Shown here in pieces: positions 2,805 through 57,300 of a DNA stretch of 64,000 bases. Source of the stretch: Saccostrea echinata (Eukaryota); NCBI RefSeq assembly GCF_033153115.1, contig NW_026889760.1:5022001-5086000 (forward strand), in the 5' to 3' direction. The translations under genes were made by a program, and so were the position numbers. Position 1 is the stretch's first letter. Every line of letters begins with the position of its first letter. The notes beneath the pieces were generated by a model, which saw only the letters and a program-made list of their open reading frames with translations, was not told the DNA's origin and did not search any database.

Positions 2805-3215
2805 AAGAAAAAGGTCTCATGGGCCACAACGCTCACCCGATTCACCCAAACTCCTCTGCTTTATAAGTATTAGAGAGATTTCGTTTCTGTATTTTCGTGT
2901 GTGAATGGTTGATATCCCTAATATGGCTCTACCATACCCCTGGCTGCCATGATTAAAAAGAACGAATCTTGGGATAATTGCATATTAGAAGACTAATTGT
3001 GATCCATGAAAAGATTACGTTAAAGTTTCATCAACTTTTTTGGTTGTTCATAAAAATCTCCCTTTGAAAAGGGACATGGCCTTCCTTTGAGCAAAGTCCA
3101 ATACCCTTCACACATGTGTGCTTTATGGCATGTTTGGTTGAAATTACCCCGGTGGTACTGGAGAATACGTAGGTTTGTAAAAAGTAACAGTATCTACAGA
3201 CGACATAATTTAGAC
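2805..3215 (-). mobile_element. Degenerate short HINE (Helentron-associated) element
   Basis: Reverse complement of the HINE 3' end (GGTGAGCGTTGTGGCCCATG) plus a diverged core (ccctttgaaaagggacatggcc...tttggttgaaatt). Confidence 0.55.
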
Positions 3216-3647
3216 TTAAATTAAGGAATGAATTGGTTAGCTACCTAAGTTACTCTGTATAGACTGAGTTGGTTCAGTTTACGCTCTGCAAGCAGCAAAG
3301 CTGTTTCTATAAAAGCATAAACTGATCTTACCCAGGTTATGCAAGTACATGTGTAACTTATGTAGCTATAAAATCAATTTCTACTAGTTTAATTGTCCTT
3401 CATTTCGTACAAAAAAAAATGTCCCGTCAAAAATGACTTCAAATGCAATAGCATTCATTTAAGCGATTGATACGTTATGATACGAGTTTCATGTATGTTA
3501 TGCATCGTCATTAACGTTGAAAACACGGGTTATACAATATATAAACTAATTATGTTTTCTATCCAATCGCGTGTCGCGGTACAAGCAGAATTAGGTTATT
3601 TACAAAAGTAGCTTTAAATGCCCAAGAATGTCCTTTTATCTCTCGCG

Positions 3648-8866: not shown

Positions 8867-10260
8867 GACCAAACTTGCCACAAAGCATTGTTCAAATGAA
8901 GGGCCACGCCCTCTTTCAAGGTTTGATAATTACGAAATAGTGAAAATTGGTGGCATGTTTTAAAAATCTTCTTCTCAAGAATCACTGGGCCAGGAAAGAT
9001 GAAAATTATATGGAAACATCTTTAGGTAGTGTAGATTCAAGTTTGTAAAAATCATGACCGCTGGGGGTAGGGCCAATATGGATGATCAAATTTTTACATA
9101 AGAATACATTATTACTAGTAAAATCTTTAAAAATCTTTTTCTCCAGAACCACTGTGCTAGGAAAGATGAAAGTTACGTGGAAACATTCTCATGTAGTGTA
9201 GATTCTAATTTGTTCAAACCATGACCCCGGGGGTAGGGCGGGGCCACAATGGATGATAGATCAAAGTTTTACATAGGAATACATTAGGAAAAATCTTTAA
9301 AAAATCTTCTTCTTCTTCTCCAGAACCACTAGGTCAGGAAAGATATGAAACTTACGTGGAAACATCCTCAGGTATAGTGTAGATTCAAGTTTGTTCAAAT
9401 CATGACCCCGGGTGTAGTGTGGGGCCACAATGGACGATCAAAGTTTTACATAGGAATACATAGGGAAAATCTTTTAATTAAAATCTTCTTCTCCAGAACC
9501 ACTGGGCAAGGAAAGATGAAACTTATGTGGAAACATTCTCGTGTAGTGCAGATTCAAATTTGTTCAAACCATGACCAAAGGGGTTGGGACGGGGACACAA
9601 TGGATGATCAAAGTTTTACATAAGAATACATAGGAAATATCTTTAAAAATCTTCTTCTCCAGAATCACTGGACCAGGAAAGATGAAACTTATGTGGAAAT
9701 ATCCTCAGGCAGTGTAGATTCAAGTTTGTTCAAATCATGACCCCCGGGTGTAGGGTGGGACCATAATGGATGATCAAATTTTTATGTAGGAAAAGATAGG
9801 AGAAATCTTTTAAAATCTTCTTCTCGAGAACAGCAGAGCCTTGATTAAACAAAAATGTATTTTATTTTATATGGAAGCATCCTCAGGTAGTGCAGATTTA
9901 AGTTTGTTCAAATCATGACCCCCAGGGGTAGGGTGGGTTACAATGGATGATCAAAGGTTTACATAGATATACATAGAAAAAAATATTTAAAAATCTTCTT
10001 CTCAAGAACAGCAAAGCCATGATTAGTCATATTTATATGGAAGCATCCTCAGGTAGTGTAGATTCAAGTTTCTTCAAATCATGGCCCCCAGGAGTAGGGT
10101 GGGGCCAGATATACATTGGAAAAATCTTTAAAAATCTCAAGAACAGCAAAGATTATGTCCCCTGGGGGTAGAGCGTTGACCTAATAGAAGATAAAACTTG
10201 TGGGAAATTTTTTTTAAAAATCTGTCAAAGAAATATGGAAGCATCCTGAGTTAGTGTAGA
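8741..10260 (+). mobile_element. HINE carrying a ~166-bp Cg170-like satellite array, 3'-truncated
   Basis: ttttAGCTCACCTGAGCCGAAGGCTCAAGTGAGCT start, (GTC)n, about 8 diverged monomers containing GTAGTGTAGATTCAAGTTTGTTCAAATCATGACCCC; no 3' hairpin. Confidence 0.85.
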
Positions 10261-12385: not shown

Positions 12386-12666
12386 AATTTTACAACATAA
12401 TAAACAAATATAATGATTGCATTTCTTACAATTTTAATACCGGGAAATTCAAACGCCAACACTATATACCAACCAACCAACCAACGTTGGCTCGATATAG
12501 TCTTGCTTTTTCAGAGATGAATTAACCAGTTAGTTTGTTATGTAAAGCATAAATTTAATTTTAATTAAGCCAGTCTGTAGTAAAACCATATTAGATTATT
12601 ATGTAAAATATTGGCGTAGTCAACAAAGCTATACTGATGGAAAATTAAGCACACAATGACATATAT

Positions 12667-12699
12667 CAGGGACCTATATACTTAGTATATAGGTCCCTG
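12667..12699. mobile_element. 33-bp P-like terminal-repeat remnant (probable excision footprint)
   Basis: catatat|CAGGGACCTATATACT TAGTATATAGGTCCCTG|catatat. Confidence 0.8.
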
Positions 12700-13122
12700 C
12701 ATATATATAGGTGCAACTCGAACAAAAGTGGGGTTATGAGAATTATTTACGTACTGTACTTTTGATCACAGAAGATCTCTATGCACATGATGTAAATTAA
12801 GATTTTCCTGTCAAAGGTTACAACAATTGAAGTGGTTACGTTTACCAACATCCCTAGAAAAAATCGCTTATGTGTAAAGAGTATACATGATGAAACTCAT
12901 TTTCTGAAATGAAGAATTTAATACGATCACCGAAGAAAAAGAATTTAAATGTTTCATTAATTAAAACCAAATTTCCAAAAATTTCAGCTTTAGATAATGA
13001 AAAAAAAATTGGGGGTAACTCGGTTCTGAAGACAAGGACACCGTCTAAATATAAGCTTATCGTTCATAACTGTTTGTACCGCAAAATGCGGGAAATATTT
13101 CCGTGGTTTAGCAGGTGCGTGA

Positions 13123-13261: not shown

Positions 13262-13710
13262 GTAAGTGTTGAATAACTTGTTATTTAATGTTTGAGAATT
13301 CTACCTTTTTCTGCCCTTTGCTTTTATACAGACGTCTAACGTCTAATATGTTCGAATTTCCTCTAAACACATGACAAAGTTTGATAACAACTTATTTTCA
13401 TCTTGATTTAGATATTAAAAGGACGATAGATAATGAAAAAAAGATATTTGTTTTATTCTGTTGTTGATTTTAAGAGATTGGCAATATATATTACTCGCAT
13501 TTATAGAAAATCCAGCTGATAGGCATGCACGTACTTTCATTTTTAGTTTTTCTCTCATTTTTAAACAGCAATGTTGTGAATATTTAATTATTTTGGGTTT
13601 GACACATTTTTTGGTATAATGGTTTTTGTGGTCATGTAGATTTGTTTAAGAAGATTGATATGGGTAAGTTTACTGAAAATGTTGAGGCTAAAACATGTCA
13701 TGTGTTTTTT

Positions 13711-14195
13711 CAGAAACCTATATACTAACGGGATAAGCAACTCCTTAAGCGCCATGTTTATTTACCCAAAACGGCACATACAACACTGCAAGTTTTTCAA
13801 ACTAAGTTTTTTCCCAGTAAAAAGCTTGTTCTCTGATTAATGTAATCTGTTCTTTTTGTGTATCAGAATGGATATTTAATAAATTTAAAAGCACATATTA
13901 TAAAATAATTTAGCTATTAAGTAAGCAACCACCAAAATCGGCGATTTCTCAGAAATACGGCCGATCAGGGGCACGCACTGATCAATAAACGTAATTACTA
14001 CTAAGATACGGAATAAAAACAGTGCTAATAACAAATCTTGAATAATTTTTTTGATAGATAAATTAAGATTTTATTCTGAAATATTTGATAACAAAAGAGA
14101 TATATTTAATTAAAATTGACTTACGAAATCCCGCAACTTATGAAATATCGCGAGACTTGCGAGAGTTGCCTATCCCATTAGTATATAGGTCTCTG
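13711..14195. mobile_element. P-superfamily-like MITE with 7-bp target duplication
   Basis: gtttttt|CAGAAACCTATATACTAACGGGATAAGCAACTC ... GAGTTGCCTATCCCATTAGTATATAGGTCTCTG|gtttttt (33-bp TIR, 3 mismatches). Confidence 0.8.
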
Positions 14196-17100
14196 GTTTT
14201 TTTAGTAAATGCTGAAATGATTTCAGTTGAATAAAAAGAACATACAGTAGCTAACGTAATGAAGTATTAAATTTCTACATCTAGTTGCTATATTTTCACA
14301 GAGCATTTTATTTATCAGGGCTGTTAGAAACAAAAAAAGTTACTTAAAGACCAACAATGTTGGCTTGTTTTACAATCTTGCCTACCAATTAAAACTGTTT
14401 AAAAATGCTTGTCGATATCAAAATATCTTTTCATATTCTTAGAAATATGAATATTGTACACCTTTTTTTAATTAATGCATAGATAACTCTAGTATTGATA
14501 AAACAATCGAGGGGTTTTTTTGTTGGGGGGGGGGGTCTTGAAAAGGCTGTATAATTATGTACGTAAATGAACAACTGTTACAAAAAATTTCAATTTATCA
14601 TAGTGACATCATTAGAGTTTATGCAAAAGGTTAAATGATAACAAGTTTTCATCTTTTTCACTATATCTTCTTAAATTTGTAACTTCATTTATTTAGCAAT
14701 TTTTTTTAAATATTTAGAATAAGGCAGAAGATAAAATAATTATAATATTTCCTTCTTAAAGAAAAAGTTTTACAAAACGAGTTTTATCTCATTTATCTGT
14801 TTTAGAGTAAAATTGCCAAATTAAATGTTAAATTTCACGCATGGAACAAATTGAACAAAATTACTTGACTTTATCACCTGCCTTTTTATAAATAGAGAGT
14901 ATGATGTGAATTTAGAATATATTGTCTTTGGGTGTTAAATAGTTCATTTGGTACAATTGATTGTGATATAAACCTGAAGTGCTTATAGTATTTGACAGAC
15001 TGATAGATTTCCAGCTCCCCCATGCATGTAAAGAGTGCCTATGTAAAATTACCATTGCAGCACCTTTTGTGTTTGACACTGTTATATTTCTTTTACTGTT
15101 TCAACAAGTTGTTGACTATACACATCTACAGCCTTCTGCCTATGAATAATTGATATCCTTCTTAATTAAAGTCCAGCTCAGCTTCAGCATCTGATAAATT
15201 TCCAACTTTTATTGTCGACCTATCTAAATTTCTCAACCACTTTTAAAAAAAACAACTGAAAACATAAAATTATGTTCCATTTGAAAAGCTTCTCCAGACA
15301 TTAAAGCATAAATATGATCCAGATTAGGTATAGTGTGGGCTGTATAAAATGCCAGTGTTGTATAATACCAGTGCTGTAAGCCATTGTCAATGAATTATTA
15401 AGTAGTGTAGTGTAACTTCATGGCTACCTTTCCCCAATGTTGCTCAGTTTGGAAAATCAATGAATTTTATTGCCGTTTAATTTCCATGGTTATGATATTT
15501 GTTTAAGTCTCAAGGACCATATGATTGACCTAACTATTTTATTGCTCCATATAAAGCCAGAGTTGCATGTACATATTTCCTTAAACAGATTCTGTATTCA
15601 GGACTTTTTCTCCAGTTGTATCTGAAGTTTTAAATGGATCATGTTGCATTGTACCCATCAGTTTTTGTTGTGATAATACATGATAGATTTGGGGATAGTG
15701 TGATGTAAATGAGTACAATTAGGAATCTTATGAGTGACTATTTCACTACTTCACAGTACTAATAATACACTGGTGAGTATTAGTAAAATGCATATGTATG
15801 ATTAATATGCATTATCCAAGGCTTAAAAGCTGTGCTTCTGTTTTGGAATTTTTAAAATTTTAGTTTTACCGATTACTTCTTGTATAGGATTTGTCTTGAT
15901 CCATTTTATATAATTATACATACTAGTAATTGAATCAGATGTGATACTGTATCTGATAATGAATAAATTGATTGTTGATTAATGTTAAAGAGAGGGAATT
16001 TAATCAGTATCCTTAATTGAAATTTCATTAGAACAGTAATCCCATTTGTAAAATGCAGATGAAGATGATTAATGAACTTTTTTTTTTCTATCGTAGTATC
16101 ACAGGTATTTTATGTTTTAACTTGTTTGACTCGATCTTTACTACAGAGTCTGTCAATGAAGGTTGCTACTGGTTGATTGTTTATGTAGCGTAAAGTTTAA
16201 AATCTTTGTTTACTGGATATGTTCTGATATACGTATAAAATGTCGATCTTATCTGAGGGGGGCTTTAAGGTAGATACCATTGGGGAGAGGAATGGAATCA
16301 TGGAGCTTTAGGTGATTTTGGGTTGGTATTTTAAATTGCATAAAACTTTGGCCTAAGTGTTTTATACTGTGTTAAATGTATAGCAATTGTTTTATGCTAA
16401 GTTTTCATACAAAAATGTAATTAAAATTTAATTGAGATTAAAATTCTTGACTATTCATTTTAAAATTTATGTAGCATTTTTTATTAATACTGTAGCATTT
16501 TTATTAATTACATTCAAAGTTAAAAAAAAATATTTCAAAGGAATTACTACAGTGAAAACATTATGAGCATGTTCTTGGTACCGGGTACATAAATTACTTG
16601 GATACATGTAAAGTTTTACATACATGTAATGGCAGTTCACATTTTCATCACCATGCGTTATACCTTTATAGTTAATCAATACATGTTTAAAGGAATATTA
16701 AGGTTGTTGGTACTCCTTCACTGTTTTACAACCTCCCAGAGAAATCATATAAAACACCTTGATTGAGGAATGTTGAGTAGCTGTTTTCATGGAGTACCAA
16801 ATTTGTGTATGTCAAGCTTGTATTGAAGCTTGGAAGTGACAAAATCCTATGTTTAATGTTGTTGTCTTGATCGAAATGCAACATTACAGTTTGCATCTCT
16901 GCTCAAATTGCTCAATTCTCATTCTTGGAGAAATCACCAGGTAAAGATCAGACCAGAAGCATTATATTATGCACAAGCACACAGGTAGCCATTGTTTAGA
17001 ATATACCTGCACTGAAACTTACCTGGGTAATATAATTTAAACCTAAACAAGGACAGGATTTTCTGTTAATAATCTCCCTGCTTGTTTGACTAGATATCAG

Positions 17101-54342: not shown

Positions 54343-57300
54343 GAAATACAGAAATGTTAGGGATGTTTAAATTTACTTATATAGAGAGTGAGAATTTATT
54401 TATATCCAGTATTCCAGTGATATTTTAAAATAGACTTCGTTTTTCTTTGTATGCAAAACGATGTTGATTTCCAGTGTTCTTCAGTGACACAGGTGTTTGT
54501 ACTAGGTGACCTTTATAGCTTGCAGAAATTTTGGCTCGTGTATCACGTGCAGTTCTTCAATCACGAAGGGCTGATTTGAAGTCTACAGCTCAATCATAAT
54601 AGGTAAATAAACAAAAGAAAAAATAATAAAAATGAAATAAAAACAAGATATTTATGAAATTTGTTTTAAACTATAACTGATAGTAAAGTAGTAGCAGTAA
54701 AGAATAGTGTCACATTTACAATTGATCAGGCTTGAAATTTAATATAAATAATAGCCTTCAAGGTGTTCAAAAGACCTGTCCTTATTGTTTAATTTACCAT
54801 ACACATAGTATGTAAACATGATGTGTATAATTTACAGGGTTCATGTAGTGACACTTCATTTCGATGTTTGGGAATGTACGTAGAGTGCCAGTTACATTAA
54901 GATTTTAGCTGAGGTCTAGTACATAAAGAATTTGTTGTAAATCAATAAATTTAATCAATTTCACATGTAATTTAAAAAAAAAAAGAAGTTATGTGAAATC
55001 AGAATGGCGACCCCGATTATAACACAAAATGGCGTCCAAAATGGCGGTCCCGATTAATTACCCAATTAGGGACGCTATATTTCAAGGAATTCATACTAAT
55101 CGGCTTTTTAATAAAGTTGACGCCATGTAACAGTTGTTAAATATGCATTGTTATAATTTTTTATTGTTTACACGAACTATTTCATGAATAATTTAACAAA
55201 CGTTTTTAAAATCACGTGACTCCTGCGAAGTCTACGATTGGTCAGCGACAGCGCGGATATTTCAGAGACGATTTGAAAATTTGCTGTGATGAAAATTTCA
55301 AGAAGAAATCAGATACTTATTAGTCGGTGAGTCTTTATTTCAGTTTAAATTTTGATGCTGCTTGTTGTAAATGCATTTATCCACTTAGAGAATGCATTAG
55401 AATATGAATATCAAGTGTAGATTTCGCGATATTCTTGGTATTTGTATCGTAGATTTCTGGTTTGTTTTGATTCAAGATGGCAGTGCTACACATGAAGTAA
55501 ATGTACTTAAACATAATCTCTTTGTTTAACATTATGTATCACAAGACTTTTGTAAAAAAAAAAAATGTGTTTTAGAGTCTTTTCTTAAAATATAAAGATT
55601 TGAAATGTGTCAATATCTGGGAACAGTTACTTAGAGTAGCCTCTGCATGAGCATGACGATAATAACAAATGAAATCCAAATGAACTGTGTGAGATAAAAT
55701 TATTGTAATAGGGTCTTTGAAATACAAGATAAAGATCTTTGTTTTAAAAAGGGGGGGGGGTCAAATTTTTTTAATGAATCAAGCAAAATTTACAACCTTT
55801 ATCCAGCATAATAAAACATAATAAATTTTATATTTATATAAGTTGTGCATAAATTTCTGATCATCTAATCCCCAAGCTCTCCACTTCCATACCTGGGGGG
55901 GGGGGGGGGGGGGGGGGTGTTAATATGAGACACATTATCATTTAATTCAGAGTGTAATGTTTCAATAATTCAAACATAGTGTGTGCATGTGTGTTGGTCA
56001 TTATTAATGCCAGATAATTTCATGAACAAACATATTCTTTTTTTTCAACAGAATACTTGTCTCCTGTGGTCATTTAAATTCCAAGCTGGAGGGAAATGCA
56101 TTAAAACTATAACTTTATCAGTAAGTATAAGATCTAATCTGATTTTTGTAAAAAATGAGTAAATGTATAAGAATATAACAAGGCACTGCTCATCAAACTC
56201 CAATGCAAACTATAGGGATTTCATCTACTAAATATGTTTAAAAATATTTCAGCATAAAATGTAACTAAGTAAGTGAAGACAGGGACCTATATACTAGGTC
56301 CCTGGTGAAGAGCAACATAATAATAATTGAACTTTTTCAGAATTGAAAGAAAATGACATGAAACTGAAAGCCGAAATTGCGTAGCATATTCAAATGGAGG
56401 ATCAGTGTTTTTAAAGAGTCCAGATGGAAACCGCAACTGTAAAGCAATGAAGACTAACAAGGTGTGCTGGTAGAAAATTCTGTGATGGATAGGAACTCTA
56501 TAAAGATAATGAAGATTACATGAACTACAATTGAACAATTCATGGGGAAAAAAAAATTGACATGAAATGGAGTATACTTTTGACTTTGTGTATTTAAATT
56601 AACTTATGTATATGCCTAAAAAGGTATGTCTATTTATTTCTTTCATTTTTTCTTATTAAGAAAGTTTAAAATATCATTATCTTGATGTCATTAACCATAT
56701 TAATCTAAATTAATTAAATGTTAGGGATTTGATTAATTAAATATTTGGGATTTCTTAGGTATAGATTGTATTTATAGAGATGACTTTTTTAAAGAAGTGT
56801 TTTTCATATATTTTCATGTACTATCATGCAATAAATTTTTATTTTTTCCATAATTATTATTGTTTAAATCAATTTTTCTTTTACATAGGCCTGCCTCAAA
56901 CGTGCCTATTTGATAGGTACATTATAGGCATACCTTAAGTATACTTTTGGCACAGACTCTTGAGTACCAAATTGGTAGGCATACTTTAGGTAGACTTGTA
57001 GGTACATTTTAGGTATACCTAAAAGGTACTCATCTGAATGTTTGAGGTGTGTACCAATATTGTGCTTTTTTGGTACCTAAACTGTAGGTATACTTTAGGT
57101 ATACTTTTGGCACATTCTTGAATGTTTGAGATGTGTGCCAATATTGTGCTTTTTTGGTACCTAAACTGTAGGCATACTTTAGGTATACTTTTGGCACATT
57201 CTTGATGGTACCTTTTAGGTATATTTATAGGCACATTTTAGGTATGCCTAGAAGGTACCTATCTGATCGTGTGCCAATATTGTGCATTTTTGATACCTAA

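What the first reader, a model, noticed from the sequence alone, without database searches (positions are those of the whole stretch)
12660..12706. 33-bp palindrome with 7-bp target duplication: candidate P-element excision footprint (16+17 nt of terminal repeat)
Seen: CATATAT flanks both sides of CAGGGACCTATATACT + TAGTATATAGGTCCCTG. These halves are the first 16 and last 17 nt of the TIR family of the intact MITE at 13711-14195, which also has a 7-bp duplication. Established: Drosophila P transposase makes a staggered cut leaving 17-nt 3' extensions of terminal repeat on the donor, and end-joining leaves scars with about 15-17 nt from each end. Inference: a molluscan P-superfamily transposase uses the same 17-nt stagger and this is a fossil excision scar, too short to be a normal MITE.
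Basis: partly seen in the sequence, partly recalled or inferred. Interest (0 to 1): 0.8.

Follow-up and report, generated by a model that had tools for sequence, protein, structure and literature searches.

The report
Fossil P-type transposon excision scar
This 33-base palindrome is the scar left when a small cut-and-paste transposon jumped out; hundreds of such scars in this oyster-like genome show that the enzyme cuts 19 bases inside each transposon end, not 17 as in the fruit-fly P element.

Summary
Window 12660-12706 reads CATATAT | 16-nt arm, T, 16-nt arm | CATATAT. The arms are the outer end of the 33-bp terminal repeat of a ~488-bp MITE family, one copy of which lies at 13711-14195.

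It is not a one-off. The genome holds 649 short remnants (18-48 bp) with both termini of this repeat, against 0 for a reversed control. One more is in the window, at 56280-56304. In 32 sites read in full:
- 26 have perfect 7-bp duplications.
- Flanks are unique.
- Junctions are diverse, with microhomology or fillers copied from the arms.

Retained repeat per side stops sharply at 19 nt. Ends keeping at least 19, 20 and 21 nt number 164, 39 and 2. A second family gives the same stop (31, then 2 at 20 nt). Its terminus is that of an element encoding a bona fide P-type transposase.

So the excision-scar reading is well supported. The "same 17-nt stagger" is not: the cap is 19 nt. The P-superfamily link is indirect, because no autonomous partner with exactly these repeats was shown.

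First-stage notes s1-805433 and s1-806614 flagged the same kind of scar elsewhere in this genome. Both are first-reader notes without follow-up.

The parts
12660..12666 (.). left copy of the 7-bp target-site duplication (CATATAT)
   Evidence: identical to 12700-12706
12667..12682 (+). left remnant: first 16 nt of the terminal inverted repeat (CAGGGACCTATATACT)
   Evidence: identical to the family consensus seen in L062/L063
12683..12699 (-). right remnant: last 17 nt of the terminal inverted repeat (TAGTATATAGGTCCCTG); base 12683 could belong to either side
   Evidence: apparent retention L16/R18, 1 nt ambiguous
12700..12706 (.). right copy of the 7-bp target-site duplication (CATATAT)
13704..13710 (.). 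target-site duplication (GTTTTTT) left of the intact MITE
13711..14195 (+). intact but older non-autonomous element (485 bp) of the same family; its repeats carry point changes (CAGAAACC / CAGAGACC, AAT at 17-19)
14196..14202 (.). target-site duplication (GTTTTTT) right of the intact MITE
56273..56279 (.). target-site duplication (GTGAAGA) left of a second scar
56280..56304 (.). second excision scar of the same family, 25 bp (17 + 10 nt of the repeat joined at a 2-nt TA overlap); a recurrent form in the genome
   Evidence: same 25-bp sequence printed for C1:13362143
56305..56311 (.). target-site duplication (GTGAAGA) right of the second scar

Best explanation
The 33-bp palindrome is a germline excision footprint. 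A ~488-bp non-autonomous cut-and-paste element with 33-bp terminal inverted repeats once inserted here and duplicated the 7-bp target CATATAT. It was later cut out by its transposase. That enzyme frees the 3' end of each transposon strand exactly at the element boundary. It cuts the other, non-transferred strand 19 nt inside the repeat. Each donor flank therefore keeps a 19-nt 3' single-stranded tail of repeat sequence. End joining trimmed the tails by 0-3 nt (here to 16 and 17) and ligated them, leaving duplication + remnant + remnant + duplication. This is the mechanism known for the Drosophila P element, but with a 19-nt instead of a 17-nt stagger.

Shown here: the anatomy, the genome-wide population of such scars, the 19-nt cap in two families, the junction spectrum and the target motif. 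Inferred: the polarity of the overhang (from DDE transposase chemistry), the end-joining pathway (from microhomology and templated fillers), and the P-superfamily identity of the enzyme acting on this particular family.
For: (1) The population is real. The pattern CAGRGACCT N{0,30} AGGTCYCTG finds 649 sites; the reversed control finds 0.

(2) Sizes are bimodal. With 16-nt ends, gaps of 0-12 nt give 225 sites, 13-43 nt give 16, and 44-74 nt give 1. Intact copies are mostly ~488 bp (pairs).

(3) These are insertion sites. Of 32 sites read in full, 26 have perfect 7-bp duplications and 3 more match at 6 of 7 positions. Flanks are unrelated. The only pairs with an identical complex filler (L021/L022, L023/L026) have homologous flanks, so they are duplicated DNA, not re-transposition.

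(4) The cap is sharp. Ends of short remnants keeping at least k nt of the repeat: k=9: 1298; 16: 778; 17: 652; 18: 318; 19: 164; 20: 39; 21: 2. About 26 of the 39 are 19+19 joins (AAC|GTT), which merely read as 20. The rest fit chance at 16% G. One of the two at 21 nt is L030, an internal deletion keeping 38+16 nt. The repeat itself is 33 bp, so the cap is not the end of the repeat.

(5) The cap is replicated. The terminus of an element encoding a transposase with P-type RNase H N, GTP-binding insertion and RNase H C domains (L061) has 97 short remnants, against 0 for the control. Ends keeping at least 17, 19 and 20 nt number 46, 31 and 2.

(6) The junctions look like Drosophila P excision repair products (tables in PMC2895639). 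They show blunt or 1-2-nt microhomology joins, or fillers. In 7 of 14 cases the filler contains stretches of 8-17 nt copied from the arms (P<0.05 against shuffles).

(7) The target motif is symmetric: T at position 2 and A at position 6 of the duplication, each 72%. This matches the 7-bp GTANTAC target of Galileo, a P-superfamily element (PMC4168063).

(8) The MITE repeat matches the P-type element's terminus at 22 of 40 positions without gaps. That ties for best of ~20,000 positions in L061 and falls exactly at the boundary defined independently by BLAST.

(9) Scars cluster. On contig C1 there are 3 neighbour gaps under 5 kb among 41 sites (P=0.0005). This is as expected from local hopping.

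(10) Scars hold 56% of all perfect 16-nt termini in the genome (778 of 1385).
Against: No allele or orthologue with the full element at this site was seen. No sequencing run was listed, so excision at this locus is inferred and not observed.

No autonomous element bounded by exactly this repeat was found. None of 30 P-type transposase loci has it within reach. One lead remains unproven: an exact repeat at C25:7113645, 7.2 kb upstream of a decayed P-type gene in the right orientation.

Two forms are recurrent: 48 copies of the 32-mer and 35 of the window's 33-mer. On its own, that would also fit amplification of a tiny element.

The pattern searches required exact matches, so older, mutated scars and elements are under-counted. 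Apparent retention lengths are inflated by up to 1-2 nt where the two arms overlap.
Confidence: 0.8

Rival explanations
1. The 32-40-bp palindromes are a self-amplifying 'micro-MITE': a unit made only of two repeat tips, which is itself cut out and re-inserted and makes a new 7-bp duplication each time.
For: Every copy has its own 7-bp duplication at a unique site. The two commonest forms occur 48 and 35 times with identical sequence.
Against: The two commonest forms are only 13% of 649 remnants. The rest differ at the centre, by length and filler, while the arms stay perfect. That is the signature of junction formation, not of descent with mutation. Complex fillers recur only in duplicated DNA with homologous flanks. 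This model offers no reason for a stop at 19 nt in two families. With a 19-nt stagger, a unit shorter than 38 bp would fall apart into two non-overlapping single strands on cleavage (inference).
Confidence: 0.06
2. The remnants arise without transposase. The two repeats of a MITE pair as a hairpin or cruciform during replication, and the loop plus part of the stem is deleted by slippage or nuclease cleavage.
For: The products are near-palindromes that keep both duplications. Long inverted repeats are known to be unstable (general knowledge).
Against: The stem is 33 bp, yet retention stops at 19 nt, with 2 of 1298 ends beyond 20. The two sides are often unequal (16+19, 17+10). Fillers copied from the arms point to end joining of free ends. 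Intermediate sizes are almost absent.
Confidence: 0.03
3. These are true excision scars, but the enzyme that moves this family is not a P-type transposase. It could be, for example, a hAT-like or still unclassified DDE enzyme with a long stagger.
For: CAGGG termini and a T...A target pattern also occur in hAT elements (own knowledge). No autonomous partner with this exact repeat was found.
Against: The duplication is 7 bp, not 8. hAT excision makes hairpins on the flanks and leaves no repeat sequence (established knowledge). The terminus of an element that does encode a P-type transposase leaves the same scars with the same 19-nt cap, and it resembles this repeat. A long stagger is so far known only for P (PMC7776569).
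Confidence: 0.1

Closest known systems
Drosophila melanogaster P-element excision footprints (17-nt staggered cleavage; end-joining junctions after P{wa} excision, PMC2895639; review PMC7776569)
   Same: The architecture is duplication + up to N nt of left repeat + optional templated filler + up to N nt of right repeat + duplication. Joins are blunt or use short microhomology. Fillers are copied from the tails. The terminal repeats are about 31-33 bp, and in both cases 14 bp lie inside the cut (31-17 and 33-19).
   Different: N is 19 here, not 17. The duplication is 7 bp, not 8. The scars here are fossil germline events fixed in a mollusc genome (at least 649 + 97 sites), not products of a laboratory cross. 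The transposases found here show no THAP domain by Pfam.
Galileo and 1360 (P superfamily, Drosophila)
   Same: Both have a 7-bp target duplication with a palindromic target motif. Galileo's is GTANTAC (PMC4168063). Here T at position 2 and A at position 6 each reach 72%.
   Different: Galileo has very long, internally repetitive repeats. I know of no report of its cleavage stagger or of genomic footprints. The sequences are unrelated.
Tc1/mariner excision footprints
   Same: The principle is the same: the non-transferred strand is cut inside the element, so a few transposon nucleotides stay at the donor site between two copies of the duplication.
   Different: The stagger is 2-3 nt and the duplication is TA, so those scars are only a few bases long and carry little information. 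Here they are 19 nt per side and can be recognised family by family.
hAT elements (e.g. Ac/Ds)
   Same: Termini begin CAGGG, and the target motif has T near the start and A near the end (own knowledge).
   Different: hAT elements have an 8-bp duplication. Their excision goes through hairpins on the flanking DNA, so footprints alter the flanks and keep no repeat sequence.

Membership tests
P-superfamily cut-and-paste transposon (non-autonomous member) and its excision footprint | Target-site duplication of 7-8 bp | tested here: met
   7 bp: 26 of 32 sites perfect and 3 more 6 of 7. The window sites are CATATAT, GTGAAGA and GTTTTTT.
P-superfamily cut-and-paste transposon (non-autonomous member) and its excision footprint | Long staggered cleavage that leaves repeat nucleotides on the donor flanks (17 nt in Drosophila) | tested here: met
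   Met in kind but with a different number. Retained repeat per side is capped at 19 nt (164, 39 and 2 ends for at least 19, 20 and 21 nt). The second family gives 31 then 2. This is inferred from scars, not from a cleavage assay.
P-superfamily cut-and-paste transposon (non-autonomous member) and its excision footprint | Mobilised by a transposase with RNase H fold interrupted by a GTP-binding insertion domain, encoded by an autonomous element with the same termini | tested here: inconclusive
   There are 33 matches to PF21787 in the genome. The L061 ORF has PF21787 + PF21788 + PF21789. That element's terminus resembles the MITE repeat (22 of 40) and leaves the same scars. No element with exactly this repeat around a P-type gene was shown.
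P-superfamily cut-and-paste transposon (non-autonomous member) and its excision footprint | Palindromic target-site motif centred on the duplication | tested here: met
   Symmetrised counts from 25 sites give T at position 2 in 36 of 50 and A at position 6 in 36 of 50. Compare Galileo GTANTAC.
P-superfamily cut-and-paste transposon (non-autonomous member) and its excision footprint | GTP requirement and THAP DNA-binding domain of the transposase | not testable with these tools
   The GTP requirement needs biochemistry. Pfam finds no THAP domain in the 894-aa ORF of L061, but that is not the proven partner of this family.
hAT superfamily | 8-bp target duplication and footprints without repeat sequence (flank hairpin mechanism) | tested here: not met
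   The duplication is 7 bp. The scars keep up to 19 nt of repeat on each side.
MITE as a mobile unit (applied to the 33-bp palindrome itself) | Copies descend from one another by transposition of the whole unit | tested here: not met
   The centres are highly diverse while the arms are perfect. The window's exact form makes up 35 of 649. Identical complex forms occur only in duplicated flanks.

The most novel reading that the evidence does not exclude
Oyster P-type transposases cut the non-transferred strand 19 nt inside the terminal repeat, two more than in Drosophila, while keeping the same 14 bp of repeat inside the cut. Because the scars are long enough to be assigned to families, this genome carries a readable fossil record of many hundreds of germline excisions and their end-joining repair. 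That record is in effect a natural double-strand-break repair assay for a mollusc. It shows that in a long-lived cut-and-paste family the scars can outnumber the surviving elements.
Probability: 0.6. Interest if true: 0.7.

Novelty: new variant of a known kind. Interest (0 to 1): 0.6.

Why it matters
The length of the P-element stagger has been measured only for the Drosophila enzyme, and it is regarded as an oddity of that system. Here the cleavage geometry of distant, molluscan P-type transposases can be read directly from genomic scars, and it comes out as 19 nt in two families. That gives a concrete prediction for biochemistry and structure.

The scars also give three further things:
- A large natural sample of germline end-joining products in a bivalve, with microhomology use and templated insertions.
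- A way to count past excisions, which are normally invisible.
- A caution for repeat annotation: hundreds of 22-48-bp palindromes with 7-bp duplications are scars, not tiny MITEs.

Tried and rejected
(1) Autonomous partner by position. I scanned 30 P-type transposase loci (±1.5 kb) and one 10-kb locus for the repeat and found none. Two mid-size elements with perfect ends (1.8 and 1.3 kb) have no coding capacity.

(2) Lead at C25. An exact repeat lies at C25:7113645(+), 7.2 kb upstream of a decayed P-type gene (L058). The second and third copies of that gene family show no exact repeat nearby in the listed hits. The leader of the L061 element does not match that interval. The lead is unproven either way.

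(3) Fetching more of the genome. From then on, most matches were shown as coordinates only. I did not work around this, so later results are counts and lengths.

(5) Reads. The look-up of sequencing runs listed none, so read laying was not used and no allele comparison was possible.

(6) Left end of the L061 element. No inverted copy of its right terminus was found, so that family's duplication length is unknown.

(7) Window 35104 (TATATGTCTCTG) looked like a family-2 end, but the similarity does not extend and it is a chance match.

(8) Process note. I did not repeat this in later scripts.

Full report
**1. The observation**

The window reads ...aatga CATATAT CAGGGACCTATATACT T AGTATATAGGTCCCTG CATATAT atagg... 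at 12660-12706. The two 16-nt arms are perfectly complementary, with one base between them. The element at 13711-14195 begins CAGAAACCTATATACTAACGGGATAAGCAACTC and ends ...AGTATATAGGTCTCTG. It sits between two copies of GTTTTTT. The 16-mer, allowing 3 mismatches, occurs 6 times in the window against 0.41 expected.

It lies at 56280-56304 and reads CAGGGACCTATATACTAGGTCCCTG, 25 bp, between two copies of GTGAAGA. The description is therefore correct. The split can be read as 16+17 or 15+18, because the junction is nearly palindromic.

**2. It is one of many**

In the window's own assembly (923 Mb, 425 contigs), the pattern with 16-nt ends and 0-12 nt between them finds 225 sites. Gaps of 13-43 nt give 16 sites, and gaps of 44-74 nt give 1. 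That last site is a composite. With only 9-nt ends and 0-30 nt between them there are 649 sites. The reversed control pattern gives 0 throughout.

Intact copies, defined by an exact 25-nt end, give only 126 ends. Where these pair up they are mostly ~488 bp apart, with a range of 414-1844. Two mid-size copies have no coding capacity. Of all 1385 perfect 16-nt termini in the genome, 778 (56%) lie in short remnants. The size distribution is thus bimodal: ~488 bp, or below about 50 bp, with almost nothing between.

**3. Each remnant marks a real insertion site**

I read 32 sites in full: 30 fetched loci plus the 2 window sites. Of these, 26 have perfect 7-bp duplications, 3 have one mismatch and 3 are poor. 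The flanks are unrelated to each other.

Only two pairs share an identical complex centre, L021/L022 and L023/L026. Both pairs have homologous flanks, so they are duplicated DNA and not re-transposition.

I rebuilt 25 empty sites from the flanks. They give a symmetric target motif with T at position 2 and A at position 6 of the duplication, each 72%, against a background of 33%. This matches the 7-bp GTANTAC target of Galileo, a member of the P superfamily (PMC4168063; 7-bp duplications also in PMC3573991).

**4. The centres are junctions, not diverged copies**

Among the first 50 strict sites there are about 30 different centres, while the arms are perfect. The centres fall into three types:
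- direct joins such as 16+16, 17+19 and 19+19;
- joins with 1-2 nt of overlap;
- fillers of 1-37 nt.

In 7 of 14 fillers of 5 nt or more, stretches of 8-17 nt are copies of the arms (P<0.05 against shuffles). This is the picture tabulated for end joining after P{wa} excision in Drosophila: 8-bp duplication, up to 17 nt of repeat, templated insert, up to 17 nt of repeat, duplication (PMC2895639).

The window's exact 33-mer occurs at 35 sites (20 in one orientation, 15 in the other). The perfect 32-mer palindrome occurs at 48 sites. Together they are 13% of the 649. I read them as the most likely repair outcomes, as is also seen in flies.

**5. The cap**

I counted the ends of short remnants (other end at least 9 nt, gap up to 30 nt) that keep at least k nt of the repeat.

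| k (nt retained) | 9 | 16 | 17 | 18 | 19 | 20 | 21 |
|---|---|---|---|---|---|---|---|
| ends | 1298 | 778 | 652 | 318 | 164 | 39 | 2 |

- Of the 39 at k=20, about 26 come from 38-bp sites that are 19+19 joins (AAC|GTT). The first base of the other arm mimics position 20.
- The remaining ~13 of ~138 fit chance, given a G content of 16%.
- Of the two at k=21, one is L030. It keeps 38+16 nt and is an internal deletion of a different kind.

The repeat is 33 bp long: the left and right ends of L062 and L063 are identical for 33 nt. The stop at 19 is therefore not the end of the repeat. A defined cut between nt 19 and 20 of the non-transferred strand explains it.

All DDE transposases must free the 3' end at the exact element boundary. 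Any repeat left on the donor must therefore be a 3' tail of the other strand. This step is inference from established chemistry. The Drosophila value is 17 nt (PMC7776569; PMC10983969).

**6. Replication in a family tied to a P-type transposase**

The genome has 33 matches to the P-type RNase H domain PF21787. One element lies in L061. Its 894-aa ORF carries PF21787, the GTP-binding insertion domain PF21788, and PF21789.

Two other copies of this element end at L061 position 9373 to 9376. Read inward, its terminus is CAGAGACATATAAAAACCAGAGATTCGCAAC.... This matches the MITE repeat at 22 of 40 positions without gaps. That ties for the best of ~20,000 positions in L061, and it falls exactly at the BLAST-defined boundary.

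This second terminus also has short remnants: 97 sites of 22-43 bp, with 0 for the control. Ends keeping at least 17, 19 and 20 nt number 46, 31 and 2. In this family a 19+19 join cannot mimic position 20. The same 19-nt cap therefore appears in an independent family whose terminus belongs to a P-type element.

A third related repeat (CAGGGACGT...) has a 34-bp scar with duplication ATTGTAT in L029:1693-1726.

**7. What is not shown**

I could not show an autonomous element bounded by exactly the window's repeat.
- One exact repeat lies at C25:7113645(+). It is 7.2 kb upstream of a decayed P-type gene on the same strand (L058). That gene is 97% identical in DNA to a second copy and about 60-65% identical in protein to the L061 family.
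- A chance neighbour of this kind has a probability of roughly 0.02-0.09 by my estimate.
- The leader of the L061 element does not match the interval.
- No sequencing run was listed, so there is no allele-level evidence of a full or empty state at this site.

**8. Rivals**

- **A self-amplifying 33-bp micro-MITE.** This fits the duplications and the recurrent identical forms. It does not fit the diversity of centres, the cap, or the fact that complex centres recur only in duplicated DNA. With a 19-nt stagger, a unit shorter than 38 bp could not leave as a duplex (inference).
- **Transposase-independent hairpin deletion.** This does not predict a stop at 19 in a 33-bp stem, the unequal sides, or the templated fillers.
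- **A non-P enzyme.** This remains possible for this particular family. It is disfavoured by the 7-bp duplication, the repeat-retaining scars and the replicated cap in the P-linked family.

**9. Further support and context**

Scars cluster. On contig C1, 3 of 40 neighbour gaps are under 5 kb (388 bp, 2.2 kb, 3.3 kb; P=0.0005 by simulation). Members of each pair differ in length, so they are separate events. This is what local hopping would leave. In the window, a scar and an intact copy lie 1 kb apart.

Along one lineage each jump adds a scar, while the copy number need not rise. Scars outnumbering elements is therefore expected for an old cut-and-paste family (inference).

Earlier scan notes s1-805433 and s1-806614 flagged the same kind of scar on other DNA of this genome. 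Both are first-reader notes without follow-up, and I did not use them as evidence. Other notes call the organism an oyster, Saccostrea echinata. The only check I have is a 92% identical protein from Saccostrea cucullata.

**10. Verdict**

The stagger is 19 nt, not 17. P-superfamily membership is likely but indirect. I found no paper describing genomic fossil footprints of P-type elements or a stagger other than 17 nt, but the library searched is incomplete.

Noticed in passing
window 56273-56311: A second scar of the same family: 25 bp, 17+10 nt joined at a TA overlap, with duplication GTGAAGA. The same 25-bp form recurs elsewhere in the genome.
   Followed up: yes
L019:1440-1620 (G000:C19:1036048-1036128): A composite site. 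A 45-bp scar is flanked by 16-nt perfectly inverted (not direct) flanks, and a further left repeat end lies 36 nt upstream. This looks like an aberrant or hybrid-end event or a foldback repair.
   Followed up: partly
L029:1693-1726: A 34-bp scar of a third, related repeat family (CAGGGACGTTTATACT.../...AGTATGTACGTCCCTG) with 7-bp duplication ATTGTAT. It lies about 150 bp from a family-1 scar.
   Followed up: no
G000:C1 (e.g. 15913088/15913476, 28200869/28204218, 31926365/31928607); window 12667 vs 13711: Scars lie closer together than chance allows (P=0.0005 on C1), and neighbours differ in length. This suggests trails of local hopping.
   Followed up: partly
L062, L063 (repeat ends) compared with Drosophila P: Repeat length minus stagger is 14 bp in both systems (33-19 here, 31-17 in Drosophila). 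This may reflect a conserved geometry, or it may be coincidence.
   Followed up: no
L024 (G000:C40:159415-159488) and G000:C83:1435761-1435834: Two identical 74-bp remnants whose 37-nt centre matches neither the arms nor the MITE. The duplication is poor. This may be captured filler DNA or a different deletion derivative.
   Followed up: no
L061:375-916, 1171-1346, 3101-3404: An unrelated high-copy element of about 1 kb (dozens of 98% identical copies) sits next to the P-type element. It is split in L061 by a 1.7-kb nested insertion with long inverted repeats.
   Followed up: no
L061:4027-6711 (minus strand); L031: The P-type transposases of this clade have about 440 N-terminal residues without any Pfam match and no detectable THAP domain.
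   Followed up: no
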